Sequence record: PV764938.1
Length of the DNA stretch: 64,000 nucleotides
Direction: 5' to 3' (one strand)
Shown: piece after piece, positions 4,044 through 51,300 of the stretch
Position numbering within the stretch: position 1 is the first letter of the stretch
Layout: each line of letters opens with the position of its first letter
Translations under genes and position numbers: made by a program
Notes under the pieces: model-generated
The model's input: the letters and a program-made list of their open reading frames with translations, nothing else
What the model was told of the DNA's origin: nothing
Databases searched by the model: none

Positions 4044-4686
4044 ATGCTACGCGGAACTCGTGTAATTTCTGGCAACGAAGCTAGAGCGTATACCAATGCA
4101 ATCGACACCCTCCGAGGTTGTCTTCATCGAAGCTGATTACGAAGAAGTAATTCTGCCGTCTATCTGGGAACAGCAGACGTTCATCGATAAAGCTGGCCCG
4201 GAAATCATCAATCAAATGTGGGCTTTTGCGGATAAGGGCGGACGCGATGTCTGCTTGATTCCCGAAGTCACTGGGCTCGTACAAGAGCTCTGGCGTAACG
4301 AATGGTCCAAGGCCAAGAAAGCACGCCGAATCTTTTATGTGAACCGTTGCTACCGATACGAACGGCCACAAGCTGGTCGTTACAGAGAGTTTACCCAGTT
4401 TGGTGTAGAACTCCTTGGTGGTGATTCGACTACAGATCGTCAAGAAGTAATCGATTTGCTCGACAATTGTTTGAAGCGTATTCCGAATCTCTCCTATGAG
4501 TTTTCGGATGGTGTAAAGCGCGGGCTGTCCTATTATACCGAAGATGGTTTTGAAGTAGAATGTTCGCAGCTTGGCGCGCAAAAGCAGATCGCTGGTGGCG
4601 GTCGTTACGCGGAGGGGATCGGTTGGGCGATCGGAGTGGATCGCCTGATTCTAGCAGCCGAATCAACTACGAGCACGAAGACATAA
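4044..4686 (+). CDS. hisS: minimal histidyl-tRNA synthetase (catalytic core only) with +1 frameshift near 4113-4120
   Basis: AAGGAGG RBS before ATG 4044; frame 1 gives MLRGTRV...DTLR, frame 2 continues VFIEADYEEVILP; motif 2 YRYERPQAGRYREFTQ, RGLSYY, GGGRY, motif 3 GWAIGVDRL; no C-terminal anticodon-binding domain. Confidence 0.85.
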
Positions 4687-17576: not shown

Positions 17577-17915
17577 ATGATATCCTACATTACTGAGTCC
17601 GAAATTCTTAAACTGCCTACGTATGTCTGTGCGCGAACAACTCGTCTCCAATACGAGAACGCCGTGATGATGTGGAACCTGATTCACGACGAGAAGATGG
17701 AAGTCTACGTCTATGATTCCATCTTGGATAAACGGCTGGCCAGTGCTAGGCGCTATGATAGCGAGCATCGACTAACCGTTCACAACTTGATTATTTCGGA
17801 TTATCTTGTATTCGTACATCAGTGGGAACTTATCAAGTGCCGACTCTGCGGAGATTATTCATTCGAGGTCGTGCGCAGCGACAAGGACTATAAACTGGAA
17901 GAGCAAAATGGCTGA
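17577..17915 (+). CDS. hypothetical protein
   Basis: 112 aa ORF in operon. Confidence 0.6.
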   Translation: MISYITESEILKLPTYVCARTTRLQYENAVMMWNLIHDEKMEVYVYDSILDKRLASARRYDSEHRLTVHNLIISDYLVFVHQWELIKCRLCGDYSFEVVRSDKDYKLEEQNG

Positions 17916-18324
17916 AGAAAAAGAAGAACTCAAAATGTGGCTTGTGGTTCGCGGTGATATCGTGATCCCAAAGGGAAAGCTTGCTGCTCAAGCCGGTCAC
18001 GGATTTTGCTCGGCAATGCGTGCGGCACTTGAAAACGATGCCTGGGGCAAAGCGACCGACGAGTCCGGTTACTACGAGGGTGTTGTCGATCGCTACTTCG
18101 AGCAGAACCAGCCCAAGATCACAGTCGTTGCAAAGAATCTCGCAGCCTTAGAGCGTGCCTACAAAGAATGTATGGACGAGATGCTGCCGTGTAGCTTTAT
18201 CATCGATGAGGGCCGTACGGTGTTTCCTGAGCCCACAGCGACTGTGGTTGGGATTGGTCCGTGCCTGCGTAGTGAGCTACCGAAGTTCGTACAGCGTTTT
18301 CAACTGATGAAAGACGACGAATGA
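17908..18324 (+). CDS. peptidyl-tRNA hydrolase, Pth2 type
   Basis: KGKLAAQAGHG, QPKITV, IIDEGRTVF, TVVGIGP signatures of PTH2. Confidence 0.9.
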   Translation: MAEEKEELKMWLVVRGDIVIPKGKLAAQAGHGFCSAMRAALENDAWGKATDESGYYEGVVDRYFEQNQPKITVVAKNLAALERAYKECMDEMLPCSFIIDEGRTVFPEPTATVVGIGPCLRSELPKFVQRFQLMKDDE

Positions 18325-19109
18325 CACTTTTCGTCCTCCAAAACAATCGTATGGAACGCCTGGTCTATCCCGTGCTGGACTATTGTCGTGAGCGTGGCTA
18401 CCAGTGGCTGGATCGGTCGATGACCGATGACTTTGATTTTGACGCCGTAAACTATGAAGAGTTCGGCGGTCATCATCAGCCTATGATTGTTTATGGTTCA
18501 GTCGGTTGGTGCAAGCTGGCGGCTAATTGTTTGGTCACGGGCATGTACGTTTGGAGCGGAACAAAGGTCTTTGATTCTTACTATTGGCAGCAAACGCTGG
18601 GTAATGGCTATTTGAATCATGATGGCACGCTAGTCCGCGCTGACTCCATCGAGGACCTTTTCAGTCACTATGCGTTCCACGACAAGTACCATCTTCGTCC
18701 CTCGAATGAGGACAAGGCTTTCCTTGGTGCAGTCTACGACAGAGAGTCGTGGCTCCGACATAAGGAAGAACGCAATGTTGTGGGCCATCTTCCCGTGATG
18801 ATGAGTCCGTTGAAGAAGATCAACGCGGAATATCGCAGTTGGTTCATCGACGGTAAAATCATAGAGATCAGTCAGTATCGGCTTAACGATGTGCATGATC
18901 GTCAACGTATCACGGATCCCAAGCTGTTTGCGGTTGCCGAGGGTATTGCTGAGCAACTACAGGTGGATCATCCCTATGTGTTGGATTTCGCTGACACCGA
19001 CGATGGTTTCAAACTGATCGAGACCAATCCGCTTCATGCTTCGGGTTGGTATGCCGCTAATGTCGGCAACGTGTTGGATGCTTGGATCGAATACGTGAAT
19101 AAAAAGTAA
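18321..19109 (+). CDS. ATP-grasp protein (DUF4343/R2K-like)
   Basis: LRPSNEDKAFLG, EYRSWFIDG, YVLDFAD...LIETN ATP-grasp motifs; paralog of 34859-35629. Confidence 0.75.
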   Translation: MTLFVLQNNRMERLVYPVLDYCRERGYQWLDRSMTDDFDFDAVNYEEFGGHHQPMIVYGSVGWCKLAANCLVTGMYVWSGTKVFDSYYWQQTLGNGYLNHDGTLVRADSIEDLFSHYAFHDKYHLRPSNEDKAFLGAVYDRESWLRHKEERNVVGHLPVMMSPLKKINAEYRSWFIDGKIIEISQYRLNDVHDRQRITDPKLFAVAEGIAEQLQVDHPYVLDFADTDDGFKLIETNPLHASGWYAANVGNVLDAWIEYVNKK

Positions 19110-19117
19110 AAGAGTAT

Positions 19118-19146
19118 TTGACTCCTCGGAGTCAACTCTATACAGT
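19118..19146 (+). promoter_or_regulatory. sigma70-type promoter of Y-like RNA 1
   Basis: TTGACT-N17-TACAGT, predicted start near 19153. Confidence 0.75.
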
Positions 19147-19152
19147 AGGGAA

Positions 19153-19291
19153 TGTGGGAGCCGATTTATTTGGGTTATCTCTTATTGGAAAAGACGGGGT
19201 CAGGTTCGAATCCTGAGGGCTCCACCATTCTATGGGGCTCTGGTGTAGCGGATAGCATCGAAAACAGTCCAGATATCCACTTGCTCTCACA
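19153..19291 (+). ncRNA. YrlA-type Y RNA 1 (Ro60-binding-like stem plus permuted tRNA-like domain)
   Basis: TGTGGGAGC/GCTCTCACA terminal stem; GCCGAT/CACTTGC bulged helix; TATTTGGGTT/AGTCCAGATA stem; order T arm, acceptor-like hairpin, D arm. Confidence 0.85.
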
Positions 19292-19310
19292 CTTTCCTTT
19301 CTGTTGGTTT

Positions 19311-19332
19311 AGAGCGTCCTTCGGGGCGCTCT
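19311..19332 (+). terminator. terminator-like hairpin
   Basis: AGAGCGTCC-TTCG-GGGCGCTCT; weak U tail. Confidence 0.7.
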
Positions 19333-19414
19333 AATCGTTTCAGGAAGAAAACAGGTTGACGGCCTTCCTGTTTGTGTTAAGTTCGAGGCACAAACAACAC
19401 GGAGATCGAAACAC

Positions 19415-19888
19415 ATGTCTAATTTCCTCAAGGTCGGCGACGTATTCTTCGCAAACACGACTTTCGAATTCGCCTACGCCGATCTCGGCTCCTACGGCCA
19501 CGAAAAGCAGTACAAGAAGGGCGAATCAGTTCTCCAGGTTTCGGATCGCGGCGACACTCGCGAACGTCACATGGTCACCACCGGCTATGATCCCAAGACC
19601 GGCCGTCGGCTTGAAGTCGAATCCCATGCACACGAAAAGCATTCCAAGCAGCGCGTCGGCAAAGAGTTTGTGGTCGAAACCGTCCGCAATCTCGCACCAA
19701 GCGAACGCGATGGTATCCGCTCGGAACCGGAAGTCACGGCGCGCCGGCTCAACAAGGACGGCTCCTACGATCCCAATGGCGAACTGATCAAGTTCGTTGA
19801 TCGTCCCGAAGATCAGGGCTCCAACTATTCGACGGCCGCGACGGTCAGGGTTCACCGCAAAATGAAGCGCGTGGTCAACTTCGTATGA
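19415..19888 (+). CDS. hypothetical protein
   Basis: GGAGATC RBS; promoter at 19356. Confidence 0.75.
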   Translation: MSNFLKVGDVFFANTTFEFAYADLGSYGHEKQYKKGESVLQVSDRGDTRERHMVTTGYDPKTGRRLEVESHAHEKHSKQRVGKEFVVETVRNLAPSERDGIRSEPEVTARRLNKDGSYDPNGELIKFVDRPEDQGSNYSTAATVRVHRKMKRVVNFV

Positions 19889-20187
19889 TCAGTGCTCGAG
19901 TTATTGCGAGGGAATCATCGCTCGAAGAATATCGGGCGAGTGTTCGGACCCAAAACTCCTGGATGCAACGTGGGGTGCAACTTTACGTTCTTGAGATTGA
20001 GGGTCAGCCCTACATTGGGTCATGGTATCCGAATGGTGCGGAACAAGACGCATTCAAGGCCAAATCCGACGAAGTCTATGCTTGGATTCGCAATATGGGT
20101 ATTGAATCGCAAACGACTCCCTGGCGTAATTTTTACTCGATGCCAAATAAAGCGACAGCGATGCAATTTAAGTTAACTTTTTGTTGA
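19885..20187 (+). CDS. FKL-motif family small protein
   Basis: VYAWIRNMG...YSMPNKATAMQFKLTFC. Confidence 0.75.
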   Translation: MISARVIARESSLEEYRASVRTQNSWMQRGVQLYVLEIEGQPYIGSWYPNGAEQDAFKAKSDEVYAWIRNMGIESQTTPWRNFYSMPNKATAMQFKLTFC

Positions 20188-20218
20188 CTTATTTCCGTGG
20201 TTCTCGTATAAATAGAAC

Positions 20219-20293
20219 TGCGGTGAGGACAACGGGTAAGTCACGAGCCTCATAAGCTTGGGAACCGGGTTCAACTCCCGGCACACGCAACCA
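20219..20293 (+). tRNA. tRNA with CAU anticodon (Met, fMet or Ile2 unresolved)
   Basis: CGAGC-CTCATAA-GCTTG anticodon arm; GGTTCAACTCC T arm; CCA; one bulged A in acceptor; U1-A72 and A11-U24 but no triple G-C anticodon stem. Confidence 0.85.
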
Positions 20294-20321
20294 AAAAGCC
20301 AGGACATTGTTCCTGGCTTTT
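20294..20321 (+). terminator. intrinsic terminator
   Basis: AAAAAGCCAGGA-CATTGT-TCCTGGCTTTT. Confidence 0.85.
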
Positions 20322-20422
20322 CCGTTTCTTGTATAAAGGTGAGAAAAATCACAAAAACTTCTTGCAGGAAACTCCTAATCCTATTAGTGTTTCCAAAATA
20401 AGGTGCAAACGAGGATAACACA

Positions 20423-20830
20423 TTGACTACTTGGTCCCGCTCTGGCAACGCCAACTTCGAACAGTTCAAACACCGCGTGAAGCTTTCTTCGTCCCAGTGG
20501 ACGACAATCAACAAAAACGGCGAGCGTCCCGGCTACGACCACGGCGGTCCACTGCACCTGGTCGGTGACATTTTCAAGGAAATGAAGTCCAACGAATCCT
20601 TCAAGGCTTTCTCCGTTGAGCGCCGTGCAACCCGCACAATGTTCGTTCCCGAGATCATCGTGAAGGACGAACCGCTGCCCGCGCACATGATCACGGAGCA
20701 GGGCATCGCAGCTCTTGCACAGGGCCCGCAGTACGATATGTTCATCAGCTTCGAATCCAAGGATGAAGCAGCTCTCTTCAAGCTGAGCTTCTCCGGCGGC
20801 GTTGTTGTCGGCCACGGCGGCATCAATTAA
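20423..20830 (+). CDS. FKL-motif family protein
   Basis: TTG start after GAGGA; ISFESKDEAALFKLSFS. Confidence 0.75.
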   Translation: MTTWSRSGNANFEQFKHRVKLSSSQWTTINKNGERPGYDHGGPLHLVGDIFKEMKSNESFKAFSVERRATRTMFVPEIIVKDEPLPAHMITEQGIAALAQGPQYDMFISFESKDEAALFKLSFSGGVVVGHGGIN

Positions 20831-20893
20831 ACAGCGTTTTTGCTGACACCAAACTGACGGTAAATACCTCGCAACTAACTGCGAGGTATTTCC

Positions 20894-21289
20894 ATGTTCG
20901 CGCTAAGCCAACGAAGCCTAAATGAGCTCCAGGGTGTTCACCCTGATCTAGTGCGTGTCGTACAACGCGCAATTCAAATCACACAAGTCGATTTCATGGT
21001 CACATGCGGCGTTCGTACGATCGCTGAACAGAAGGTGCTGGTTGCTGCTGGTGCTTCTAAGACTATGAACTCCCGACACATTCCCGGCAAAGATGGTTTC
21101 TCCAAGGCTGTTGATCTTGCTGCGATGATTGGTCCGAATGTCCGTTGGGATTGGCCGCTCTACGCAACGCTTGCTGTGGCTATGAAGACTGCGGCTGCCG
21201 AGCTGAAGGTTCCATTGGAATGGGGTGGTGATTGGAAGTCCTTCAAGGACGGTCCTCACTTCCAGCTTCCCGCAAAGTTTTATCCGTAA
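20894..21289 (+). CDS. endolysin, peptidase M15C (L-Ala-D-Glu endopeptidase) type
   Basis: LQGVHPDL, CGVRTIAEQ, SRH, AVDL, WGGDW...DGPHFQL; TAAATA at 20861; GAGG RBS. Confidence 0.9.
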   Translation: MFALSQRSLNELQGVHPDLVRVVQRAIQITQVDFMVTCGVRTIAEQKVLVAAGASKTMNSRHIPGKDGFSKAVDLAAMIGPNVRWDWPLYATLAVAMKTAAAELKVPLEWGGDWKSFKDGPHFQLPAKFYP

Positions 21290-21298
21290 GGTGAGCAA

Positions 21299-22261
21299 AT
21301 GGGTCTTCCGAGCATCGGTCAGTATGTTGGGGTAGTTTCGTCAAGCAGTTCGGCGAAAGCTCCCTCTGTCGACGGTAAGTTCGTAATCATTGCAAGCGGC
21401 GCATCTACCAATTCGAACCGTCTCAACTATAGTAGCGATGGTAAGACTTGGGCTGTTGGTACAATTTCGGACCGAGACTGGAGATCCATTTGTTTCGACA
21501 CCCACAACAAACGTTTCATCGTCTCAGGCGGTGGTATCGCATATTCCGCCTATTCTAGCAATGGCATAAGCTTCACGACAGTTTCTCACGGAGTTTCCTA
21601 TATCACGGCTGCCGTAAACACCACAGGAACTTCAATTCTTGTCGGAACAAACACCGCTGCATATTCAACAGATGGTGGTGCAAACTGGACAACCACAACA
21701 ATTCCTGCTGGTACCTATTACGCGGCAGAGTGGTCTCCCTACTATGGAAAATTCTATGCAATAGCCACAAATGGTTCCCGTGTCTCTTCTCCCGATGGTA
21801 TAACATGGACAGCACAAACGTCCACTTCTGCGGTATCATGGGTCAATATTGATACGAACGGATCTGGCAGAATGGTGGCGATCGCGTATTCGAACCCCAC
21901 GTATATCACGACCAGCGACGATGGTACCACATGGAGCGCCGCAACATCCGCAGGCATTGATGCAAACGGTACAGTTATGAAATGGCTTCCGGCTCCACGT
22001 TCGCATTGGGTTGCAGGTTCTCAAAGTAATCAAGGACTCTTTACGTCGACGACTGGTGCTGCCGGTTCCTTTACTCGTCAAACTGGTTTCGGTTCAAATC
22101 CATTTGGTATTGCTTATTCTCCAGAGCTCAATATCCTGGTCACTGCCAATTACAGCAGCTTGCCCCAGTATAGCACTGATAATGCGAGTGCAGTCTGGAC
22201 AAACGGTTCAAACGTTTCGAGTAACCTTTGGCAAGACATCGCTTGGGGTAATTTCGCATAA
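21299..22261 (+). CDS. Asp-box/BNR beta-propeller protein, probably virion or late
   Basis: Repeated SxDGxxW motifs (SSDGKTW, STDGGANW, SPDGITW, SDDGTTW); Ser/Thr/Gly-rich. Confidence 0.7.
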   Translation: MGLPSIGQYVGVVSSSSSAKAPSVDGKFVIIASGASTNSNRLNYSSDGKTWAVGTISDRDWRSICFDTHNKRFIVSGGGIAYSAYSSNGISFTTVSHGVSYITAAVNTTGTSILVGTNTAAYSTDGGANWTTTTIPAGTYYAAEWSPYYGKFYAIATNGSRVSSPDGITWTAQTSTSAVSWVNIDTNGSGRMVAIAYSNPTYITTSDDGTTWSAATSAGIDANGTVMKWLPAPRSHWVAGSQSNQGLFTSTTGAAGSFTRQTGFGSNPFGIAYSPELNILVTANYSSLPQYSTDNASAVWTNGSNVSSNLWQDIAWGNFA

Positions 22262-22383
22262 CCTGTGCGTCAAAATCTTTTCTTAAAAATTCAGGAATTT
22301 ATGTCGTTTTGTGGTTGACGCTCCTGTTTCCTTCCTGTTAACTGATTGCATAGACATCGGAACAGCATTGGGAACAGCAACAC

Positions 22384-24024
22384 ATGCAAGCAACAGCAAA
22401 CGCAACTACGCTGCAAAAGCGTGCTTCTGCCGCTATTAAGAATCTCTTCGACCAGGGCGAAAAAGCGGTGCTGGTGCAGGCAATGACTGGAGCCGGTAAG
22501 ACCTACATCGGCTTTGATTTCATTGTCGAATATCTGCTTGCAGATCCTTCCCACAAGGTTCAGATCGTTGTTCCGACGATCGCACTGGTTGAACAGTTTC
22601 ACGAAACTGCCCAGCGTTTTGGTTTCCTCGCTTCCGTATATCACGGCGAACTCAAGTATCGCCTCGATGACGAGGGCAAGAAGGTGAAGATGGAATATCT
22701 TCCCCAAGCTCGGATCAACATTACGCTTCCCGACACTTTCAAGACGCTGATCGTAGACGGCAAAAATCACTACGGCTTCGACATGTCCTGGAAGCCTACG
22801 CTGCTCATGATGGACGAAGCTCACAAAAACACGTCGGCTTCCTCGCAGGAATTTAAGAAGTGGGCACCGGAAGCTCTGGTTCTCGGTTTCACCGCAACTC
22901 CGCGTCGTGAACAGAACGAGCTTGGTGAATATCTCATCGATTGGTACGGCGACAACTTGCTGATCGCGGCTTCTCCTGAGGAACTGATCGAAGCCGGTCG
23001 CATTGTTCCGCCCAGCATTCACGAGTTCAAGGAATCCCACAACGAATTCGACGAATGGGAAGCACTCACAGAGGGCCATACAAACAAATCTACGATGGTT
23101 GTTGCGCGTGATACTAAAGCTGCAATTGCTTACGTGGACGGCTTCCGTAAGCGTTTTCCGCAGCTTCGTGTGGAACTCATCACTGCGGTCGGCGATATGA
23201 CTGCCGGTATTGCCCAGCAGACTCCGAAACAGCGCCAGCAACTGCAGAACGAATTCAAGCGTGGACTCATCGATGTGCTGGTTTCCGTCGATACGCTTTG
23301 CGAAGGTTTCGATGCTCCGCGCGCCAAGTTCGTAATGATCATGCGCAGCATGACAAGCGAAGCTCTCTACCATCAGGTTGTCGGTCGCGTGCTTCGTATG
23401 TTCACTTGCGCAGTCAGCGGTGAGACCAAGACGCACGGTTACGTCATGGACTTCGGTGGCAACCACAAGCGTTACGGCAGCATTGTCGAACGGGAATGGA
23501 CCCCTAAGGACTACGCTCCGTTGGTTTCGATTGTGGCAAACGACAACAGTGTTCCACGGAAGCAGTTCAACAAGGCAACGACGCTGATGATTTCCTGCTT
23601 CGGCTGCCAGAAGGTGTTCGACGTTAAGTCGCGCAGCACTTGCCCTGCTTGTAAGCGTTCGACGAAGGCATTCATCGACATTACGGTGAAGGATTATCTT
23701 CAGGACGTCTACAACATCCAGGCTTCCGAATACATCCAGAGCCACCACCGGGGCATGATGAAGAACTTGTTCTTGAGCCAGGCTGAATCAAAGTTCATCA
23801 AGAACGAACGCACCGGGAAGTTCGAGCCGGACATGTCACACACTATCACTATGCTCCGCACGATGATGAACGATCTGATGGGCCACAAGGTGTTCCTGGA
23901 TACTGGTCTTTTCGACAAGGATCACCAGGTACTCGCTGACATCTTCCTGAACGATAAGAAGCTCGGCGAAAAGCTTAATATTTCGTTTATGGACAAAGTT
24001 ACGCTTGCACTCGTAGCAGCGTGA
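22384..24024 (+). CDS. superfamily 2 (DEAH) helicase with C-terminal Zn finger
   Basis: AMTGAGKT, DEAH, TATP, GFDAP, QVVGRVLR; CFGC...CPAC. Confidence 0.9.
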   Translation: MQATANATTLQKRASAAIKNLFDQGEKAVLVQAMTGAGKTYIGFDFIVEYLLADPSHKVQIVVPTIALVEQFHETAQRFGFLASVYHGELKYRLDDEGKKVKMEYLPQARINITLPDTFKTLIVDGKNHYGFDMSWKPTLLMMDEAHKNTSASSQEFKKWAPEALVLGFTATPRREQNELGEYLIDWYGDNLLIAASPEELIEAGRIVPPSIHEFKESHNEFDEWEALTEGHTNKSTMVVARDTKAAIAYVDGFRKRFPQLRVELITAVGDMTAGIAQQTPKQRQQLQNEFKRGLIDVLVSVDTLCEGFDAPRAKFVMIMRSMTSEALYHQVVGRVLRMFTCAVSGETKTHGYVMDFGGNHKRYGSIVEREWTPKDYAPLVSIVANDNSVPRKQFNKATTLMISCFGCQKVFDVKSRSTCPACKRSTKAFIDITVKDYLQDVYNIQASEYIQSHHRGMMKNLFLSQAESKFIKNERTGKFEPDMSHTITMLRTMMNDLMGHKVFLDTGLFDKDHQVLADIFLNDKKLGEKLNISFMDKVTLALVAA

Positions 24025-24038
24025 GCGCATAGTACGCG

Positions 24039-24141
24039 AACACACACAGTAATGCTTTCGGGCAACGCGGTGTGTTAGTTGAGACGCTTTCGAGTGATTC
24101 AACGGAAGGGTGGCCCGGGCTTCGGCTAGGGTCACTCTTTT
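24039..24141 (+). ncRNA. structured 3' element with three UUCG-capped hairpins ending in a terminator
   Basis: AACACAC/GTGTGTT, GTTGA/TCAAC and GGGTGGCCC/GGGTCACTC stems, each enclosing a TTCG loop; TTTT tail. Confidence 0.55.
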
Positions 24142-24186
24142 AAATTCAACAGTTGACTACTGGCTCCAAAACAGTTAGATCAACAA

Positions 24187-24322
24187 TTGCAGGCCGATGG
24201 TGTAAGGTTATCGCATCTCAAGCCGGAAACAGAGGTTCGAATCCTCTACCCCGCACCAACTGAGTGGGGTTCGTCTAGTGGTTAGGACAACGTAAATGGT
24301 CTTATCCGACACTTGCCTGCAA
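24187..24322 (+). ncRNA. YrlA-type Y RNA 2
   Basis: TTGCAGGC/GCCTGCAA terminal stem; GCCGATG/CACTTGC; T arm AGAGG-TTCGAAT-CCTCT; acceptor-like ACCCCGC/GTGGGGT; D arm with AGTGGTTA loop; promoter at 24153. Confidence 0.85.
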
Positions 24323-24360
24323 CCCGAGTTTCTCCTTCGGGGTCGCTGTTGAAGACAAAA

Positions 24361-24386
24361 AAAGCCGCTCGAAAGGGCGGCTTTTT
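24361..24386 (+). terminator. intrinsic terminator
   Basis: AAAGCCGCTC-GAAA-GGGCGGCTTTTT. Confidence 0.9.
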
Positions 24387-24424
24387 ATTCTTGACTTACC
24401 AGGGCTCGTACACTAATTTGTTGC

Positions 24425-24560
24425 TGTGAGCCGATGATATAGGGTTATCTCAAAAACAGCCTTACGTGGGTTCGAATCCCTCCACAGGATTCTTTGGATC
24501 TTGTGTAGCCGAGTGGTTAGGCAGCCGTCTCAAAGGTCCTACATCTAACACTTGCTCACA
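24425..24560 (+). ncRNA. YrlA-type Y RNA 3
   Basis: TGTGAGC/GCTCACA terminal stem; GCCGATG/CACTTGC; T arm GTGGG-TTCGAAT-CCCTC; acceptor-like CACAGGA/TCTTGTG; D arm GCC-GAGTGGTTA-GGC; promoter TTGACT-N17-TAATTT at 24391. Confidence 0.85.
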
Positions 24561-24571
24561 CTGTATTGCGT

Positions 24572-24599
24572 AAAAAAGGCGGCCTTCGGGTCGCTTTTT
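24572..24599 (+). terminator. intrinsic terminator
   Basis: AAAAAAGGCGGCC-TTCG-GGTCGCTTTTT. Confidence 0.9.
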
Positions 24600-24669
24600 C
24601 CGTATCTGCCGGTTGACTTCCTTCCTATTTCTGTTAAATTCAGAACATAGGAACAACGGAGAGATCGAA

Positions 24670-25131
24670 ATGTCCGACGCACATATGTTTGAGGATGCTG
24701 CAACTGCCCTGAACTACATCATGTCGGGCAAGGCAATTTTCACGATCGTCTCCAAGAAGACCGGTCAGCGGTTCACCTACTTGGTTGAACGCTCCTCGCA
24801 GGACCGGAAGGATAAGCGTACTGACATCGGCTTCCGTTTCGTCAAGCTTCTCAACGGTCCCGACAACACGCGGAGCTTCCAGTACATGGGCATCATCCGC
24901 GGCCAGACTTATGAACACGGTCGTAAGAGCAAGCTTACGGAAACTGCTCCGAGCGTGATCGCCCTGAACTGGGTCATGCAGTCGCTGGTTCGCGGTGAGA
25001 TCCGTGCAGATCAGCTGGAAATTTGGCACGAGGGTCGCTGCGGTAAGTGCGGTAAAAGATTGACTGTCCCGGCCAGCATTGCTACGGGTCTGGGCCCGGA
25101 ATGCGTAAAGTCGGCATTCCGTTGCGTTTAA
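24670..25131 (+). CDS. DUF6011-like protein with C-terminal Zn-binding motif
   Basis: Ends WHEGRCGKCGKRLTVPASIATGLGPEC, matching the recalled DUF6011 pattern. Confidence 0.7.
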   Translation: MSDAHMFEDAATALNYIMSGKAIFTIVSKKTGQRFTYLVERSSQDRKDKRTDIGFRFVKLLNGPDNTRSFQYMGIIRGQTYEHGRKSKLTETAPSVIALNWVMQSLVRGEIRADQLEIWHEGRCGKCGKRLTVPASIATGLGPECVKSAFRCV

Positions 25132-33094: not shown

Positions 33095-34010
33095 ATGACG
33101 CAAACGGAAACGTTTGCAGCACAATTCGGAATGAAACACTTCCAAACAGTTTGGCCGCTTAGGGCCGTTAAAGGGGCAGCATCCGCGAGGGTGTTAAAGC
33201 AAGGTTTCCCAGAAACTTGCGCCATAGCAATATGGTTCCACTAAGCAAGCACGGGCCTTCCGCGCAGGAGGTATCGTCCAAAAGGCGGTGCTAAGCGGGA
33301 AGACAAGGAGTAAGTTTGCGTCCGAAAGACGCGCTCATCGAGGCCTTACGGTGTAGATGAGTAACCCGCAAGGTATACTGCTCATGCAAAACTTGTCGAC
33401 CGCCGATGGCTAACGTGTAGTTGATTAGTTCGATGCTTAGCGGCAAAGAGCGGTCAGCAATTTGATACGGAAACGGATTGCAACGTCCGAGTTCGTAGAA
33501 AATGATTGAGTACCTCGCAAGGGGAAAGATACGCGGCGTGTAGTATTTTGTTTGGCGAAAGTCAGATGAAGCTACAGAGACAGCACGTCGTAATGGGTTT
33601 GCGATAGCATAGTGGTTATGCAACGGCCTTCTAAGCCGTCGAACGTAGGTTCAAATCCTGCTCGACATAAAAACGCAAAGACTGTCTCGGTAGTGTGTGA
33701 AAGGTGCTTAATGCTCAGGGCGAAAGCTAACTGAGTCACTCAAAGGCCGCAAGCTGGAGAGTGTTTATAGAAGAAAGTTCATAATCGGGTAGCTCCGATG
33801 AGCGGCATGCGAGTGTCGGTGGGCCGGAAACTGTAGAATAGCATACTATGACGTGTCTAATGCCTGACACTAAAAACGGCAGCATTGGTTGATACGTGTT
33901 TAGGTGAAAGCCAAGCGCGTGGATGTTAGAGGGAACCCTCCGGGTAGCACTGGAACGGGATAATCCTCAAAGGCAACTACTGGAAGCTATAATCTCAGGC
34001 TTCCCGAAAA
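33095..34010 (+). ncRNA. large ornate ncRNA, GOLLD-like
   Basis: ~915 nt without a credible ORF between a promoter and a terminator; many GNRA-capped hairpins; embedded tRNA domain. Confidence 0.65.
33598..33669 (+). tRNA. tRNA-Arg(UCU)-like domain embedded in the large ncRNA
   Basis: D arm GCAT-AGTGGTT-ATGC; anticodon arm ACGGC-CTTCTAA-GCCGT; T arm GTAGG-TTCAAAT-CCTGC; acceptor only 3 bp, no CCA. Confidence 0.75.
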
Positions 34011-43392: not shown

Positions 43393-43716
43393 ATGGCAGA
43401 CCTCAAGCTCGCTGACTTCATCGAAAAGACCGAAGGCGGCAAGATTTTCACCGTCGAATTCTACAAGCGTGGCAACGGCGAACTTCGCAAGATGAACTGC
43501 CGGCGCGGTGTCCAGAAGGGTGTCAAGGGTGTCGGCCTTGCGTTCGACCCCAAGGCCAAGAACCTCCTGGTCGTCTACGACATGCAGAAGATCAACGAAG
43601 GCTCCGACGAAAAGGGCGCGTTCCGCATGATCAATCTCTCCGACCTGAAGACGCTGAAGATGGACGGCGCTTCGTACGACTGGGACCACGCTTCCCAGAT
43701 GTTTGTGGAAGCATAA
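43393..43716 (+). CDS. conserved phage protein, possible SH3/WYL-like beta-barrel
   Basis: IFTVEFYKRGNGELRKMNCRRGV...VVYDMQK...GAFRMI pattern. Confidence 0.6.
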   Translation: MADLKLADFIEKTEGGKIFTVEFYKRGNGELRKMNCRRGVQKGVKGVGLAFDPKAKNLLVVYDMQKINEGSDEKGAFRMINLSDLKTLKMDGASYDWDHASQMFVEA

Positions 43717-43748
43717 ATATCAGAGGGTTATCCCCTCATAAGCACCCC

Positions 43749-43778
43749 AAAGGGCTGGATTCGTCGTCCAGCCCTTTT
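43749..43778 (+). terminator. intrinsic terminator
   Basis: AAAGGGCTGGA-TTCGTCG-TCCAGCCCTTTT. Confidence 0.85.
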
Positions 43779-43799
43779 CTGTTATCGAAAGGATGAATA

Positions 43800-44198
43800 T
43801 TGAATTGTAAAAAGGGCCTATGCGCGTTGTTTGTTGTGCTTGCACTTTCAAACACTCCGGCACACGGTACTGAAGTTACAAGCGGAACTAAAATCGTAGC
43901 TCAAACCAAAAGTGTCAATTACGGATGCTTCCCATTGAAACTAATGGGCGTCCTAACTTTCATACAAAAGGAAACAAGAAGAAGGATCATAATAACAAGC
44001 GGCCATCGTGGTCATGGTCGACGTAAGTCCTTGCATCGCTCTTGCAAGGCAGCTGATATTCGTGTGCCGGGATACTCTACGAGTAGACTCAGGCAAATAG
44101 CTAGAAGAGCGCCAGGCATTGGTGGCATTGGAACCTATCGGAAACAACCGGGACTTTTGCACGTAGATGTCGGGTCAAGAAGAGAATGGACCCATTAA
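43800..44198 (+). CDS. peptidase M15A (YcbK-like) cell-wall hydrolase
   Basis: Signal-like N-terminus; ITSGHR, KSLH, AADI, LHVDVG zinc ligands. Confidence 0.8.
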   Translation: MNCKKGLCALFVVLALSNTPAHGTEVTSGTKIVAQTKSVNYGCFPLKLMGVLTFIQKETRRRIIITSGHRGHGRRKSLHRSCKAADIRVPGYSTSRLRQIARRAPGIGGIGTYRKQPGLLHVDVGSRREWTH

Positions 44199-48337: not shown

Positions 48338-51300
48338 TTAGTTGATTTTCTTGATGAATACTGCGCCAGCTTCCTGAACAAGGTTTGCACCAAGTGCATC
48401 GTAATCCTGGCCAGGAGCGCCCACAATAAGCGCACCCTTTGCATCCAAAGCAACTGCATGACCGAACAAGTCCTCTGGGTGACGACCGTTTGTCATTTCA
48501 GTACCAGCTTCGTCGGAGAAGCCTGCAATCTTCTCCTTGAGAGCCCATGTAGCATTCGAAGCATCCAACGCAAAGACGTAAGTTGCACCAGCGTTGGTCA
48601 TTGGGTTCTCACCATCTGCATCTGTGGACGCCATAGCGGAGCCTACCGCAATGTATCCGCCAGCCACAGCCAGTGTTTTACCAAATACTTCACCAGCATC
48701 TGGAGTCACTGTGAGCGTCTGTGTGAGTGTTAGGGTTTCGCCGTCGAATGCAAAGATGTGAACCGCGTTTGCGCCGGGTTCGCCAACAACCACTGTGTTG
48801 GTCTTTTCATCAATACCAACGGTTTCACCGAAACGACCATCCACAATACGCGATGGGCTTGTGAACTTGGCAACCATTGGGAACTGTGTGTTCTTCAGGT
48901 AGATCCAAATTGCACCAGCGTTCGAGAGTTCCAGGTCACCCGTAACGTCGAAGTCGTATTGCGGAGAACCGATGACCACGAAGTTCTTGTTTGCGGATAC
49001 CGAGTAACCGAACCAATCACCAGCGTTACGACCACGTGCCAAGCCCTGTGCGGAGAATGTACCACGGACGAACCAGTCTTCACCAACACGCTCGTAAGCC
49101 TGGACAATACCAGAGTTTGCGACCTGTGGAGCACCTGGAACGTTGTTTGCATCCGGAACACCAACAACGAACTTGTTCGTGTCAGCAGCCGCAACCGCAG
49201 CACCGAAGCGGCCATTGGTTGCACCGTTGCCGGTGTAGTCCTTCCGAGCTACCCAGTTACCTTCAGCTACGCGCTGGAATACACGGGCAAGACCTGTATC
49301 GTTGGTGTAATTGCCTGTGATGATCCAACCGTTTCGGCCAGACAATGTGCGACCGAAACCAATCGGAGCCGTTGCATCTGGAACGATTTTAGATTCTGTG
49401 TTCCACTTGTCGCCGGTCTTATTGTAGACGAACAGCGCACCACTCTTGCTCGTTGCGTTACCATAGAGGTCATAGCTGTGGAACGGAGAACCGACAACCA
49501 CGAAGTCGTGATTCGCGTAAACGGAGTAGCCGAACTGATCGCCAGCAGCACGACCATTTGAGCGACCGGGAACCGAATAATCCGCGTTTGCGTCTGTGAG
49601 CGAACCATTCGAGTTGATCGTGAAGGTCTTTGCACGACCAGCACCCGAAAGCGCAGGCTGTGGACCAACACCCTGGGAAGCACCACTGTCGAGTTCGATA
49701 AGTCGTGTACCGCTTACGATCTCTGCGACCTTACCTGCACCAGCCTCGATGTGACGGGCAATTGTCCAAGCACCGTTTGTTGCTGTGAGTTCGACCATCT
49801 TCGCTGCATCGTTAGTACCGGCATAGAGCTTGTCACCGATTAGCTTCAATGTCTTACCGTAGCCGAGCAATTCCGAGTTTGTTTCCAAGTTGAGTTTTTC
49901 ACGGAATGTATAGGTTGCGCCCTTCTTGTCGAATACGAAGATTGCACCCTGACCATCACGGAAGTTGACACCGTTGTTGCCGTAATCGTGACCAGGAGCA
50001 CCAACCAGGATCTGTGTTGGTGTAACTTCAACAGCCGAACCGAAGAGATCCGATGCAAAGCGACCGTGGGAAACACCATCACCAACAATAGAACCCGCGC
50101 TTGTGAGCGTTGGAACCGTGATGTCGAATGTTGTGAAACCACCCGAGTTGGAGACTGTTGGCTTGACACCATCTGTATTACGACGTGTCTGACCCAGTAC
50201 AATCTTATCACCGACCAATGTAAGCGAGATACCCAAATCAACAGTCGCTGTAAGCGTTGTCTTTGCTTGGCTTACGAAGTTGCTGCCGTCGAACGCGAAC
50301 AATTCCACAGCATTTTTGTCTGGGCTACCAGCGAATGTCGGAACCTCAAGCGTTGCAATCGAGGAGTACGGCTGCGAACCGAGAACCAACAGGTTGTTGT
50401 CGTTGACTTCCAGAGCAAAGCCGAAGTAATCGGCATTTGTTGCCTTGGACGATGTGATCTTCTGGATAAGCTGCCACTTACCGTTGATGCGCTTGTATTC
50501 AAATACCGCACCCGAGTTAGCTGGAAGTGGATCGCCGCTGGAGTCATATTCGTGACCAGGAGCACCAACGTAAATCTGATTCTCATCCTTGATACCAACG
50601 GCATGACCGAAGAAGTCTGTAGCCGAACGGGAGTTGATGATACCAGGAGCCACAACAGCATCGGAATCCAAGAGTGTTTCGAGAGTCGTTGCAACGTCCT
50701 TGATGACTTCGTAACCACCCGGACGACCGTCCAGCGTAAATGTCGCAGTACGTGTCGAACCGCCACCACCACCACCGGCAATTGCTAGGAAGTCGTTGCC
50801 ACGAGCAATACCCGCGAGACCACCACCACAACCAGCGCCATCAATAGCCGTGTTCAGCGAGCGGCCGCCTAGACCACCAAGACCATACTTGCGGTTCTGA
50901 TTTCGGTTAGAGAGGTCCGTACCGATTTGTCCACCAGCACCACCACCGCCGACTACGATCTTGAGCTCTTCGCCTTCTGTGACGCTAAGAGTACCTGTTA
51001 CGAATGCACCTGCACCGCCGCGACCACTACGACGTGTTGCCCAACCCGAAGCATGGTTTGCAGCACCACCACCAGCGCCCCAAAGCGCAACTGTGATTTC
51101 AGTTACACCAGCTGGGACTGTGAAGGTCTGGTCAAAGCCCGTGTAGTTGAATACCACGTCTGTTGTACCGTGTGTGATTACGACACGAGCGTCTTCACCG
51201 ATTGCACCAACAGTATTACCGCCAGCGCCAGTTGCGTTTGCATTTGCCGAGTTTGCACGAGCTGCACCCAAGCTGAGGATCTGCGAGCCACCGTTTGGAA

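What the first reader, a model, noticed from the sequence alone, without database searches (positions are those of the whole stretch)
19153..24560. Three phage-encoded YrlA-type Y RNAs (Ro60 stem plus circularly permuted tRNA domain)
Seen: RNAs at 19153-19291 (139 nt), 24187-24322 (136 nt) and 24425-24560 (136 nt), each with its own promoter and downstream terminator hairpin. All share a 5'/3' terminal stem with different but compensating sequences, a GCCGAT...CACTTGC bulged helix, GGTTATC, a second long stem, then T arm (GGTTCGAATCC), acceptor-like hairpin and D arm in reversed order. Established: metazoan Y RNAs use GUCCGA.../...CUUGAC with a bulged C to bind Ro60, and bacterial YrlA RNAs join this stem to a permuted tRNA-like domain and tether Rsr to partners such as PNPase. 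No Ro60/TROVE gene is in this window. Inference: three diversified Y RNAs that hijack or titrate host Rsr, or act as tRNA decoys.
Basis: partly seen in the sequence, partly recalled or inferred. Interest (0 to 1): 0.92.

Follow-up and report, generated by a model that had tools for sequence, protein, structure and literature searches.

The report
Three unannotated phage Y RNAs (YrlA-type)
A giant Sinorhizobium phage carries three unannotated small RNA genes that are tRNA-mimicking Y RNAs of a known class. They most likely partner the Ro60 protein that the phage itself encodes about 270 kb away, so they are real new members of a known kind.

Summary
The window is bases 1-64000 of Sinorhizobium jumbo phage Phosso (PV764938.1), where these RNAs are not annotated.

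Each RNA has a terminal stem with a bulged-C/CGA//UUG helix, a second stem, an invariant GGUUAUC, and a permuted tRNA domain (T arm, 7-bp acceptor hairpin, U8, D arm). A covariance model built from them scores 94-110 bits on the three copies. Covariation is strong across 30 relatives: 95.5% of cells paired, score 0.89 against 0.23 shuffled.

The same model hits RNAs directly upstream of Ro60 genes in mycobacteriophage Rizal, many other phage contigs and several bacteria. An RNA-motif-only search gave 16 model-positive loci, 13 with Ro60 directly downstream. The YrlA assignment therefore holds, although Rfam's YrlA model fails (17 bits against 69). That model also fails on a Ro60-adjacent array.

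Phosso encodes its own Ro60 (gene 398, 290301-291965). Its genome also holds two mini Y RNAs and one long Y-like RNA.

Two of the RNAs encode NCCA after the acceptor stem, and R1 has G3:U70 plus A73. This suggests RNase P processing and perhaps charging with alanine, which is untested.

The parts
19153..19291 (+). Y RNA R1 (139 nt). P1 19153-19160/19284-19291; CCGA 19161-19164 opposite UUG 19281-19283; P2 19167-19173/19269-19275; GUUAUC 19174-19179; V stem-loop 19180-19199; T arm 19200-19216; acceptor 3' strand 19217-19223; ACCA 19224-19227; loop to 19233; acceptor 5' strand 19234-19240 (G3:U70); U8 G9; D arm 19243-19258.
   Evidence: Model R1 108.5 bits, E about 1e-26; element map; orthologue L003:1411-1554 is 82.6% identical with compensating changes.
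19118..19146 (+). Promoter-like site for R1: TTGACT-N17-TACAGT, ending 6 nt before the RNA.
   Evidence: The class is enriched on the + strand: 30 sites against 6.6 expected.
19309..19341 (+). 11-bp GC-rich hairpin (UUCG loop) followed by UCGUUUC. Terminator-like with a weak U tract, 18 nt after R1.
   Evidence: Read from the sequence. Not listed by the terminator scan because the T run is short.
24153..24180 (+). Promoter-like site for R2: TTGACT-N16-TTAGAT.
   Evidence: Read from the sequence. It has the same -35 box as the enriched class.
24187..24322 (+). Y RNA R2 (136 nt). P1 24187-24193/24316-24322; CCGA 24194-24197 opposite UUG 24313-24315; P2 24199-24206/24301-24307; GUUAUC 24207-24212; T arm 24231-24247; acceptor 3' strand 24248-24254; ACCA 24255-24258; acceptor 5' strand 24264-24270; D arm 24273-24288. 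Bases 27-72 of R2 (V region, T arm, acceptor 3' strand) resemble a phage tRNA-Glu.
   Evidence: Model R1 109.5 bits; map; orthologue L001:9123-9263 is 79.4% identical; nt 27-72 are 85% identical to a Sphingobium phage tRNA-Glu.
24359..24386 (+). Strong bidirectional intrinsic terminator between R2 and R3 (GCCGC...GCGGC stem flanked by A and T runs).
   Evidence: listed on the - strand; the palindrome with a 3' T run also reads on the + strand; sequence.
24391..24419 (+). Promoter-like site for R3: TTGACT-N17-TAATTT.
24425..24560 (+). Y RNA R3 (136 nt). P1 24425-24430/24555-24560; CCGA 24431-24434 opposite UUG 24552-24554; P2 24436-24443/24538-24545; GUUAUC 24444-24449; T arm 24466-24482; closed 7-bp acceptor hairpin 24483-24505 (no CCA); D arm 24508-24522, with a 3-bp stem that looks like class II tRNAs.
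   Evidence: Model R1 93.9 bits; map; orthologue L001:8587-8720 is 70.6% identical, with wholly different but still paired acceptor and D stems.
24573..24600 (+). Terminator-like hairpin after R3 (AGGCGGCC UUCG GGUCGCUU followed by UUUUU).
   Evidence: Read from the sequence.

Best explanation
R1, R2 and R3 are three paralogous YrlA-class Y RNAs of jumbo phage Phosso. Each is transcribed from its own sigma-70-type TTGACT promoter in a region rich in tRNA genes.

The paired 5' and 3' ends form the Ro60-binding module: P1, then a bulged C with C-G, G.U and A-U pairs (GCCGA opposite UUGC), an internal loop, and P2. This module most likely docks on the phage's own Ro60 ring protein (gene 398, 290301-291965).

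The other end is a circularly permuted tRNA: the P2 stem stands in for the anticodon stem, followed by a variable region, T arm, 7-bp acceptor hairpin and D arm. It presents a tRNA-shaped handle that recruits a tRNA- or RNA-processing partner to Ro60. Host PNPase is the documented precedent, in Deinococcus radiodurans and in Thermus phage phiLo. The likely role is RNA quality control or repair during infection.

The three differ in acceptor, D and variable arms, so they probably address different partners or are processed differently. R1 and R2 carry a 7-bp acceptor stem, an encoded NCCA and a U-rich loop before G+1. They are therefore likely cut by RNase P into two-piece RNAs with a free CCA end, as shown for the Mycobacterium smegmatis YrlA.

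Shown here: the anatomy, the covariation, homology to Ro60-adjacent RNAs, and the presence of a Ro60 gene in the same genome. Inferred: binding to gp398, the identity of the effector, and the processing.
For: (1) Anatomy is identical in the three copies and in 30 relatives.

(2) Covariation. 22 modelled pairs are 95.5% paired; the covariation score is 0.894 against 0.234 shuffled (0 of 500 shuffles reach it) and 0.12-0.16 for slid controls; 19 of 22 pairs show double changes. The D stem covaries (11-24: UA 12, CG 12; 12-23: CG 11, GC 7, UA 8). P2 forms 6-10 bp from different sequences in all 29 sequences that could be parsed.

(3) tRNA hallmarks are kept: U8 in 24 of 26, A14 and GG in every D loop, T loop UUCRANY, G53-C61.

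(4) The model built only from the Phosso-type RNAs hits RNAs directly upstream of Ro60 genes. Examples: mycobacteriophage Rizal, 71.7 bits, 160 nt before Ro; Chthonomonas, 65.5 bits, 60 nt before rsr; Poribacteria; a cyanobacterium; many Streptomyces-phage-like contigs.

(5) A search by RNA motif alone gave 16 model-positive loci, and 13 of them have Ro60 directly downstream on the same strand. The L011 array also lies upstream of a Ro60 gene.

(6) Phosso gene 398 is a full-length Ro60: TROVE plus vWA_Ro60, with E 1e-105 to 1e-114 against vertebrate Ro60 and Deinococcus Rsr structures.

(7) The contigs that hold L001/L003, L007/L008, L004, L010 and L012 also encode Ro60 far from their Y RNA genes. 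Atu_ph07 has a syntenic Ro60.

(8) Published defining features of YrlA match (PMC4201824; bioRxiv 10.1101/312249). A phage Ro60/Yrl/PNPase complex has been reported (PMC12135203).

(9) The phage carries a tRNA and RNA-repair toolkit: a CCA-adding-type nucleotidyltransferase, Rnl1- and Rnl2-type ligases, PTH2 and 62 tRNAs.
Against: There are no expression or binding data. The published 5'-strand motif GNCGAAN0-1G is only partly matched: all three RNAs read GCCGAU, with U where the motif has its sixth-position A. The genes lie 266-271 kb from the Ro60 gene, whereas every described YrlA is adjacent to it. Rfam RF02553 scores only 17.1 bits against a gathering score of 69. Single-sequence folding is not significantly better than shuffles. 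The Ro60 gene lies among tail genes, while the RNAs have TTGAC-type promoters in a region of small genes and tRNAs, so expression timing could differ (inference). The effector is unknown even for the model YrlA RNAs.
Confidence: 0.8

Rival explanations
1. The RNAs target the host's Rsr/Ro60, by hijacking or titrating it, rather than a phage protein.
For: Some Rhizobiales carry TROVE genes on plasmids: Rhizobium in 44 records, also Bosea and Shinella. A host Rsr is therefore conceivable. The Y RNA genes are not linked to the phage Ro60 gene.
Against: The phage encodes its own complete Ro60. Related jumbo-phage contigs with these RNAs also encode Ro60. No Sinorhizobium or Ensifer record appeared among the TROVE hits in the plasmid collection or among the genome hits. 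Both searches have limits: the host chromosome is not in the plasmid set, and the genome search reaches only close relatives.
Confidence: 0.08
2. They are circularly permuted or split tRNA genes that mature into decoding tRNAs, or two-piece tmRNA-like molecules of the kind found in alpha-proteobacteria.
For: The gene order T arm, acceptor 3' strand, CCA, loop, acceptor 5' strand, D arm is that of permuted tRNA and two-piece tmRNA genes. There are weak partial Rfam hits to permuted tmRNA (19.5 bits) and cyanobacterial tmRNA (16.9 bits) at R1. R1 has G3:U70, as tmRNA does.
Against: There is no anticodon loop: the anticodon-stem position continues into P2, the Ro60 helix and P1. There is no tag reading frame and there are no pseudoknots. 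ARAGORN, which finds permuted tmRNA, reports nothing there. The tmRNA scores are far below gathering (47 and 70). R3 and most relatives have closed acceptor loops. The family is tied to Ro60 genes.
Confidence: 0.03
3. They are decaying remnants of tRNA gene rearrangements in a phage with 62 tRNA genes, or R1 is really the 60-codon ORF at 19152-19334. In either case the RNA has no function.
For: They lie among tRNA genes. An ATG-initiated ORF overlaps R1. Adjacent tRNA pairs give weak false hits to the model (about 20-26 bits).
Against: The three score 94-110 bits, far above tRNA-pair artefacts. All helices keep pairing through compensating changes across orthologues that are 71-83% identical. 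The synteny R1, helicase, R2, R3 is kept in contig 3300020156_000001. The ATG of the ORF is absent in the L003 orthologue, and the GenBank record does not call that ORF. The best match of each tRNA-like domain to any Phosso tRNA is only generic (about 38 of 50 positions), so these are not recent duplicates.
Confidence: 0.03

Closest known systems
YrlA RNAs of bacteria (Salmonella Typhimurium YrlA, crystal structure 6CU1; Chen et al. 2014, PMC4201824; Wang et al. 2018, bioRxiv 10.1101/312249)
   Same: Modular build: a 5'/3' terminal stem carrying the Ro60 site (GNCGA core) and a tRNA-like domain in the order anticodon-like stem, variable region, T arm, acceptor stem-loop, D arm. The tRNA tertiary-contact nucleotides are kept.
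   Different: The Phosso RNAs read GCCGAU rather than GNCGAA. They keep a conserved 3' strand (CACUUGC), whereas the papers state that only the 5' strand is conserved in bacteria. The acceptor stem is 7 bp (6 bp in Salmonella). The genes are about 270 kb from Ro60 rather than in an rsr operon. Rfam's YrlA model does not detect them.
Mycobacterium smegmatis YrlA (Chen et al. 2014)
   Same: A 7-bp acceptor stem. The published RNA is cut by RNase P at the acceptor loop and ends in CCA, giving a 5' fragment of about 82 nt. R1 and R2 have the same geometry.
   Different: In M. smegmatis the CCA is completed after cleavage (an additional CA was detected). In R1 and R2, and in 9 of 26 cleanly parsed relatives, NCCA is encoded in the gene. 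Processing of the phage RNAs is not shown.
Phage Y RNAs next to phage Ro60 (mycobacteriophages such as Rizal/Bxz1, Caulobacter phage CcrColossus, Bacillus phage G; Thermus phage phiLo Yrl1/Yrl2 with phiRo60 and host PNPase, PMC12135203)
   Same: Phage-encoded Ro60 together with phage-encoded Y RNAs. My model hits the Rizal RNA 160 nt upstream of its Ro gene at 71.7 bits.
   Different: Those RNAs are adjacent to the Ro60 gene. In Phosso and related contigs of 180-480 kb the tRNA-like Y RNAs are 55-270 kb away, dispersed among tRNA genes and present in several paralogues. phiLo Yrl RNAs are described as stem-bulge-stem RNAs; the passages I read describe no tRNA-like domain.
Deinococcus radiodurans Yrn1 and metazoan Y RNAs (Rfam RF00019)
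   Same: A bulged helix formed by the RNA ends binds Ro60. [quoted passage not shown] From my memory only, human Y RNAs also show ...CACUUGAC and GUUAUC-like strings.
   Different: No RF00019 match was listed at E up to 10. In Yrn1 the tRNA-like arms have a different orientation. Metazoan Y RNAs have no tRNA domain.
Two-piece (permuted) tmRNA of alpha-proteobacteria and cyanobacteria
   Same: Permuted gene order with an internal CCA. R1 has the alanine identity pair G3:U70.
   Different: No tag ORF, no pseudoknots and a true D arm. Rfam scores are far below threshold and ARAGORN reports nothing there.

Membership tests
YrlA-class Y RNA (Chen et al. 2014; Rfam RF02553) | [quoted passage not shown] | tested here: met
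   P1 is 6-9 bp in the three RNAs. Across 30 sequences, 9 of 10 P1 pairs show double changes and 92.5% of cells are paired.
YrlA-class Y RNA (Chen et al. 2014; Rfam RF02553) | Ro60-binding motif GNCGAAN0-1G on the 5' strand | tested here: inconclusive
   The GNCGA core is present in all three (GCCGA), but position 6 is U, not A. Orthologues and paralogues in the same model family read GCCGAAU or GCCGAAG (L001:9123, L008:5999, L006:1626). The opposite strand can form bulged C, C-G, G.U, A-U.
YrlA-class Y RNA (Chen et al. 2014; Rfam RF02553) | tRNA-like domain in the order V, T arm, acceptor stem-loop, D arm, closed by an anticodon-like stem | tested here: met
   Element maps. T stem 99.3% paired and acceptor stem 97.1% paired, with all 7 acceptor pairs covarying. 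D stem covaries. P2 forms in all 29 sequences that could be parsed.
YrlA-class Y RNA (Chen et al. 2014; Rfam RF02553) | Nucleotides of tRNA tertiary contacts (U8, A14, G18 G19, T-loop U54 U55 C56 R57 A58, G53-C61) | tested here: met
   U8 in 24 of 26; A14 and GG in every D loop; T loop UUCGAAU in 17 of 26 and UUCRANY in all; G53-C61 invariant.
YrlA-class Y RNA (Chen et al. 2014; Rfam RF02553) | Gene adjacent to the Ro60/rsr gene | tested here: not met
   The Ro60 gene lies at 290301-291965, which is 266-271 kb away. Ro60 is in the same genome, and homologues of the RNAs are adjacent to Ro60 in 13 of 16 motif-retrieved loci and in Rizal and bacterial loci. Adjacency was the discovery criterion used in the 2014 paper, not a mechanistic requirement.
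YrlA-class Y RNA (Chen et al. 2014; Rfam RF02553) | Match to the Rfam RF02553 covariance model at its gathering score | tested here: not met
   17.1 bits against 69, partial (model positions 30-81), for R3 only. The model also gives no gathering-level hit in loci L001-L011, including the Ro60-adjacent array in L005. The Rfam model is therefore too narrow for this branch.
YrlA-class Y RNA (Chen et al. 2014; Rfam RF02553) | Physical binding to Ro60/Rsr; modification by TruB and DusA | not testable with these tools
   Needs co-immunoprecipitation, gel shift and modification mapping.
Metazoan Y RNA (Rfam RF00019) | Match to the family model | tested here: not met
   No RF00019 match was listed at E up to 10 in 18900-24800.
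tRNA (Rfam RF00005 / ARAGORN) | Contiguous cloverleaf with an anticodon arm | tested here: not met
   Neither ARAGORN nor the Rfam tRNA model reports a tRNA at the three sites. The arm order is permuted and there is no anticodon loop.
Two-piece/permuted tmRNA (RF04321, RF01851) | Model match; tag reading frame; pseudoknots | tested here: not met
   19.5 bits against 47 and 16.9 bits against 70, covering only the T arm, acceptor and CCA. ARAGORN finds no tmRNA. 136-139 nt leaves no room for a tag ORF and pseudoknots.

The most novel reading that the evidence does not exclude
R1 and R2, and a recurrent subset of phage Y RNAs, may not be closed tRNA mimics. They may be precursors that RNase P cuts in the acceptor loop, yielding a nicked two-piece Y RNA with a genomically encoded, free NCCA 3' end. 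R1 (G1-C72, G2-C71, G3:U70, A73, CCA) would then be charged with alanine by host AlaRS. The result would be a Ro60-tethered aminoacyl-tRNA mimic, which could sense or regulate the tRNA charging and repair state, or deliver Ro60 to EF-Tu or ribosome-associated RNA during infection.

Supporting leads. NCCA directly follows the 7-bp acceptor stem in 9 of 26 cleanly parsed relatives (about 0.4 expected by chance). It stays invariant while the discriminator base and the loop vary. The loop often ends in UAU before G+1. The full alanine-like set recurs in R1, its orthologue L003, and two Ro60-adjacent RNAs, L056:3794-3929 and L005:1636-1774. The phage encodes a CCA-adding-type enzyme.
Probability: 0.12. 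Interest if true: 0.85.

Novelty: new member of a known kind. Interest (0 to 1): 0.5.

Why it matters
Y RNAs in bacteria and phages were catalogued by searching next to Ro60 genes. This case shows that large phages keep several Y RNA genes far from Ro60, scattered among tRNA genes, where both that strategy and the current Rfam YrlA model miss them.

Counting the two mini and one long Y-like RNAs outside the window, Phosso has up to six candidate Ro60 ligands. It also has a full tRNA and RNA-repair toolkit and grows on a safe laboratory host (S. meliloti). That makes it a tractable system for two open questions: what the tRNA-like module of YrlA binds, and what a Ro60 particle does for a virus.

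The encoded CCA ends and alanine-type acceptor stems make the old speculation that some Y RNAs are aminoacylated directly testable. On the practical side, the three genes should be added to the annotation, and a broader YrlA covariance model is needed.

Tried and rejected
- Rfam at gathering threshold on the window gave tRNAs and GOLLD only. In E-value mode it gave only noise plus a 17-bit partial YrlA hit.
- Rfam on related loci found no YrlA anywhere, so that test is uninformative.
- Minimum-free-energy folding of single sequences gave z-scores of only -1.2 to -1.6, and parts of the predicted folds were wrong. I abandoned it in favour of comparative analysis.
- MAFFT plus RNAalifold found P1, the T stem and the acceptor stem. 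It mis-registered the D arm and P2, so I parsed those with scripts instead.
- BLAST of the 6-kb region and of R2 against 50,697 phage records found no homologous RNA outside Phosso. The only hit was a tRNA-Glu fragment.
- Comparing each tRNA-like domain with the 62 Phosso tRNAs gave only generic similarity, so no recent donor tRNA was identified.
- The host Rsr question stays open. There was no Sinorhizobium or Ensifer hit in the plasmid collection or in the genome scan, but neither search covers the host chromosome sensitively.
- The weak model hit at window 43709-43841 is a GAGGGUUAUCCCCUC hairpin plus the terminator of ORF 43393-43716, not a Y RNA.
- Weak hits between adjacent tRNA genes that span only the T-arm-to-D-arm part of the model are the 'dimeric tRNA' artefact described by Chen et al.
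- No tRNA-like Y RNA was found within 4 kb of the Atu_ph07 Ro60 gene. I did not scan the rest of that genome.
- The supplementary tables of Chen et al. 2014 and the 2020 Annual Review were not available.

Full report
**Identity of the window.** The 6-kb region matches Sinorhizobium phage Phosso (PV764938.1; 469,473 bp; host S. meliloti NRRL L-50) at 100% identity. Window coordinates equal record coordinates 1-64000. The GenBank record annotates nothing at the three sites.

**The observation.** Reading the sequence and mapping it base by base shows the same plan in all three elements:
- a terminal stem P1 made by the two ends, with different but complementary sequences in each copy;
- GCCGA opposite UUGC, which can form a bulged C followed by C-G, G.U and A-U pairs;
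- an internal loop and a second stem, P2;
- an invariant GGUUAUC and a variable region;
- a T arm with loop UUCGAAU;
- a 7-bp acceptor-like hairpin, then U8 and N9;
- a D arm with A14 and G18 G19, and an A-rich linker back to P2.

The composite motif occurs three times in the window against zero in 100 shuffles.

Each RNA is preceded by TTGACT and a -10-like hexamer. R1 and R3 belong to a promoter class found 30 times on the + strand against 6.6 expected. Each RNA is followed by a hairpin, and the one between R2 and R3 is a strong bidirectional terminator. Single-sequence folding energies are unremarkable (z -1.2 to -1.6), so the case rests on comparison.

**Relatives and covariation.** An exact-motif scan of IMG/VR gave 12 loci, mostly from contigs of 375-480 kb.
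- A covariance model (R1) built from 14 sequences scores 108.5, 109.5 and 93.9 bits on the three RNAs. No other site in the 469-kb genome scores above 26 bits.
- On 30 matches, the 22 modelled pairs are 95.5% paired. The covariation score is 0.894 against 0.234 in shuffles (0 of 500 reach it) and 0.12-0.16 when partners are slid. 19 of 22 pairs show double changes, including all seven acceptor pairs. That alignment was fitted to the model, but the slid controls argue against an artefact.
- The D stem covaries, and P2 forms 6-10 bp from unrelated sequences in every one of the 29 sequences that could be parsed.
- The closest relative contig (3300020156_000001, 480 kb) has orthologues of all three in the same order: R1-like, then a helicase, then R2-like and R3-like. 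Identities are 83%, 79% and 71%, with compensating changes.

**What they are.** The plan is the one published for YrlA RNAs: a Ro60-binding terminal stem and a tRNA-like domain ordered anticodon-like stem, V, T, acceptor stem-loop, D (PMC4201824; bioRxiv 10.1101/312249). Three independent links to Ro60 were found.
1. The model built only from Phosso-type RNAs hits RNAs directly upstream of Ro60 genes. These are in mycobacteriophage Rizal (71.7 bits; RNA 2695-2842, Ro from 3001), Chthonomonas (65.5 bits; RNA 2309-2441, rsr from 2501), Poribacteria, a cyanobacterium and many phage contigs.
2. A search using only the RNA motif GGTTATC...GGTTCRANTCC gave 16 model-positive loci, and 13 have Ro60 immediately downstream on the same strand. 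The Y RNA array in L011 also lies upstream of a Ro60 gene. L005 has five copies upstream of a TROVE plus vWA_Ro60 gene.
3. Phosso itself encodes Ro60: gene 398, 290301-291965, annotated 'Ro-like RNA binding protein'. It scores TROVE 1.4e-47 and vWA_Ro60 5.5e-47, and aligns over its full length with vertebrate Ro60 and Deinococcus Rsr structures at E 1e-105 to 1e-114.

The contigs that hold L001/L003, L007/L008, L004, L010 and L012 also encode Ro60, about 55-340 kb from their Y RNA genes as the linear contigs are numbered. Atu_ph07 has a Ro60 that is 48.6% identical and sits at the same place, between the tail-sheath and tail-tube genes.

**The Rfam test.** RF02553 gives only a partial 17.1-bit match against a gathering score of 69. 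It also reports nothing in loci L001-L011, including the Ro60-adjacent array in L005. The model is too narrow for this branch, and its failure is not evidence against membership.

**Differences from described YrlAs.**
- The 5' motif reads GCCGAU, not GNCGAA. Orthologues and paralogues do read GCCGAAG or GCCGAAU.
- The 3' strand CACUUGC is conserved within this group. The papers say that only the 5' strand is conserved across bacteria.
- The genes are unlinked from Ro60 and sit among tRNA genes, each with its own promoter.
- The acceptor stem is 7 bp throughout. R1 and R2 encode ACCA directly after it. NCCA occurs in 9 of 26 cleanly parsed relatives (about 0.4 expected) and stays fixed while the discriminator base and the loop vary.
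- R1 and its orthologue carry G1-C72, G2-C71, G3:U70 and A73, the alanine identity set (established knowledge: G3:U70 is the main AlaRS determinant and suffices in minihelices). Neighbouring pairs show compensating changes. The same set recurs in Ro60-adjacent RNAs L056:3794-3929 and L005:1636-1774.
- Bases 27-72 of R2 (V region, T arm, acceptor 3' strand) are 85% identical to a phage tRNA-Glu. To my eye, not tested here, R2's D arm also looks tRNA-Glu-like and R3's D arm looks class-II-like.

M. smegmatis YrlA, the one published case with a 7-bp acceptor stem, is cut by RNase P and ends in CCA (PMC4201824). R1 and R2 are therefore plausible RNase P substrates, while R3 with its closed loop is less so.

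**Mechanism.** The most likely reading is that the three RNAs bind phage Ro60 through the P1/bulge/P2 module and present tRNA-shaped handles that bring a partner to the ring. PNPase is the documented partner, in D. radiodurans and in Thermus phage phiLo (PMC12135203). The phage also encodes a CCA-adding-type nucleotidyltransferase, Rnl1- and Rnl2-type RNA ligases, PTH2 directly upstream of R1, an ATP-grasp protein, aminoacyl-tRNA synthetases and 62 tRNAs. A review of jumbo phages already lists TROVE proteins 'with a tRNA-like partner' among RNA-repair systems (PMC7824862). Binding, partner and processing are inferred, not shown.

**Rivals.** Acting on a host Rsr is possible but not needed, and no Sinorhizobium TROVE gene turned up in limited searches. 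Decoding tRNA or tmRNA-like function is excluded by the absence of an anticodon loop, a tag ORF and model matches. Junk or coding readings are contradicted by covariation, synteny and the non-conserved ATG of ORF 19152-19334.

**Beyond the window.** Phosso has further Ro60-ligand candidates.
- Two RNAs of about 65-70 nt consist of the Ro60 module alone. They lie at 420434-420502 (GCCGAAUG, a full motif match) and 420662-420734, between tRNA genes. Similar short forms lie next to Ro60 in other loci.
- An RNA of about 215 nt lies at 288694-288908, 1.4 kb upstream of the Ro60 gene. It has its own TTGACG promoter, and an orthologue in L024 has a compensating terminal stem.

**Verdict.** The three elements are real RNAs of a known class and are unannotated. 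Phage Y RNAs and phage Ro60 have been known since 2014, so novelty is modest. The unlinked multi-gene arrangement, the encoded CCA ends and the alanine-type acceptor stem are worth experimental follow-up.

Noticed in passing
window 33533-34001 (+): A GOLLD RNA (Rfam RF02032, 186.6 bits, E 6e-51) lies in an unannotated gap of the GenBank record. It contains a tRNA-like insert at 33598-33669 (Rfam tRNA 54.1 bits) that ARAGORN does not call.
   Followed up: no
L018:38255-38650 (record 288255-288650, outside the window): A conserved non-coding stretch of about 385 nt lies between the tail-sheath gene and the Ro60 gene and has its own promoter-like site. It is 73% identical to L024:2008-2400. The consensus fold has 109 pairs, 17 of them with compensating double changes in just two sequences. 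There is no Rfam match. This is a candidate unknown structured RNA next to the Ro60 locus.
   Followed up: partly
L018:38694-38908 (record 288694-288908): A long (about 215 nt) Y-like RNA lies 1.4 kb upstream of the Ro60 gene: GAAGCCGAC...GGGUUAUC...CACUUGCUUC, with a TTGACG-N17-TAAATA promoter and no tRNA-like domain. The orthologue in L024 (about 2448-2625) keeps the stem through compensating changes.
   Followed up: partly
L021:20434-20502 and L021:20662-20734 (record 420434-420502, 420662-420734): Two mini Y RNAs of about 65-70 nt (P1, CCGA//UUG, P2 and a GGUUAUC loop only) are wedged between tRNA-Gly and tRNA-Asp and between tRNA-Arg and tRNA-Leu. One has a perfect GNCGAANG motif. They resemble YrlB-type RNAs.
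   Followed up: partly
window 1-48000, + strand: The promoter-like motif TTGAC-N15-18-TANNNT (often TGTTAnnnT) occurs 30 times, all on the + strand, against 6.6 expected. It probably marks an early-gene region of small ORFs and tRNAs read by host sigma-70.
   Followed up: no
window 17908-19109, and L016:17468-19529: A PTH2 peptidyl-tRNA hydrolase and an R2K-clade ATP-grasp protein lie directly upstream of R1. A second R2K ATP-grasp gene is paired with a T4 Rnl1-type RNA ligase at 167-169 kb. A CCA-adding-type nucleotidyltransferase lies at 367954-369522.
   Followed up: partly
window 19152-19334 (+): A 60-codon ATG ORF overlaps R1. Its start codon is not conserved in the orthologue, and the GenBank gene numbering skips 57 at this place.
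   Followed up: yes
window 48338-57826 and 57900-63872+ (-): Two giant ORFs on the minus strand (3162 aa, and one of about 3692 aa that runs to 68978) are annotated as hypothetical proteins.
   Followed up: no
window 4096-4686 (+): A 196-aa fragment-sized histidyl-tRNA synthetase core domain lies next to a phage tRNA-His gene.
   Followed up: no
L011:1089-4082 (-), L005:751-1774 (+), L008, L006: Some phage contigs carry arrays of 4-9 tRNA-like Y RNA genes in tandem. L011 and L005 have them directly upstream of Ro60. The copies differ in their acceptor and D arms.
   Followed up: partly
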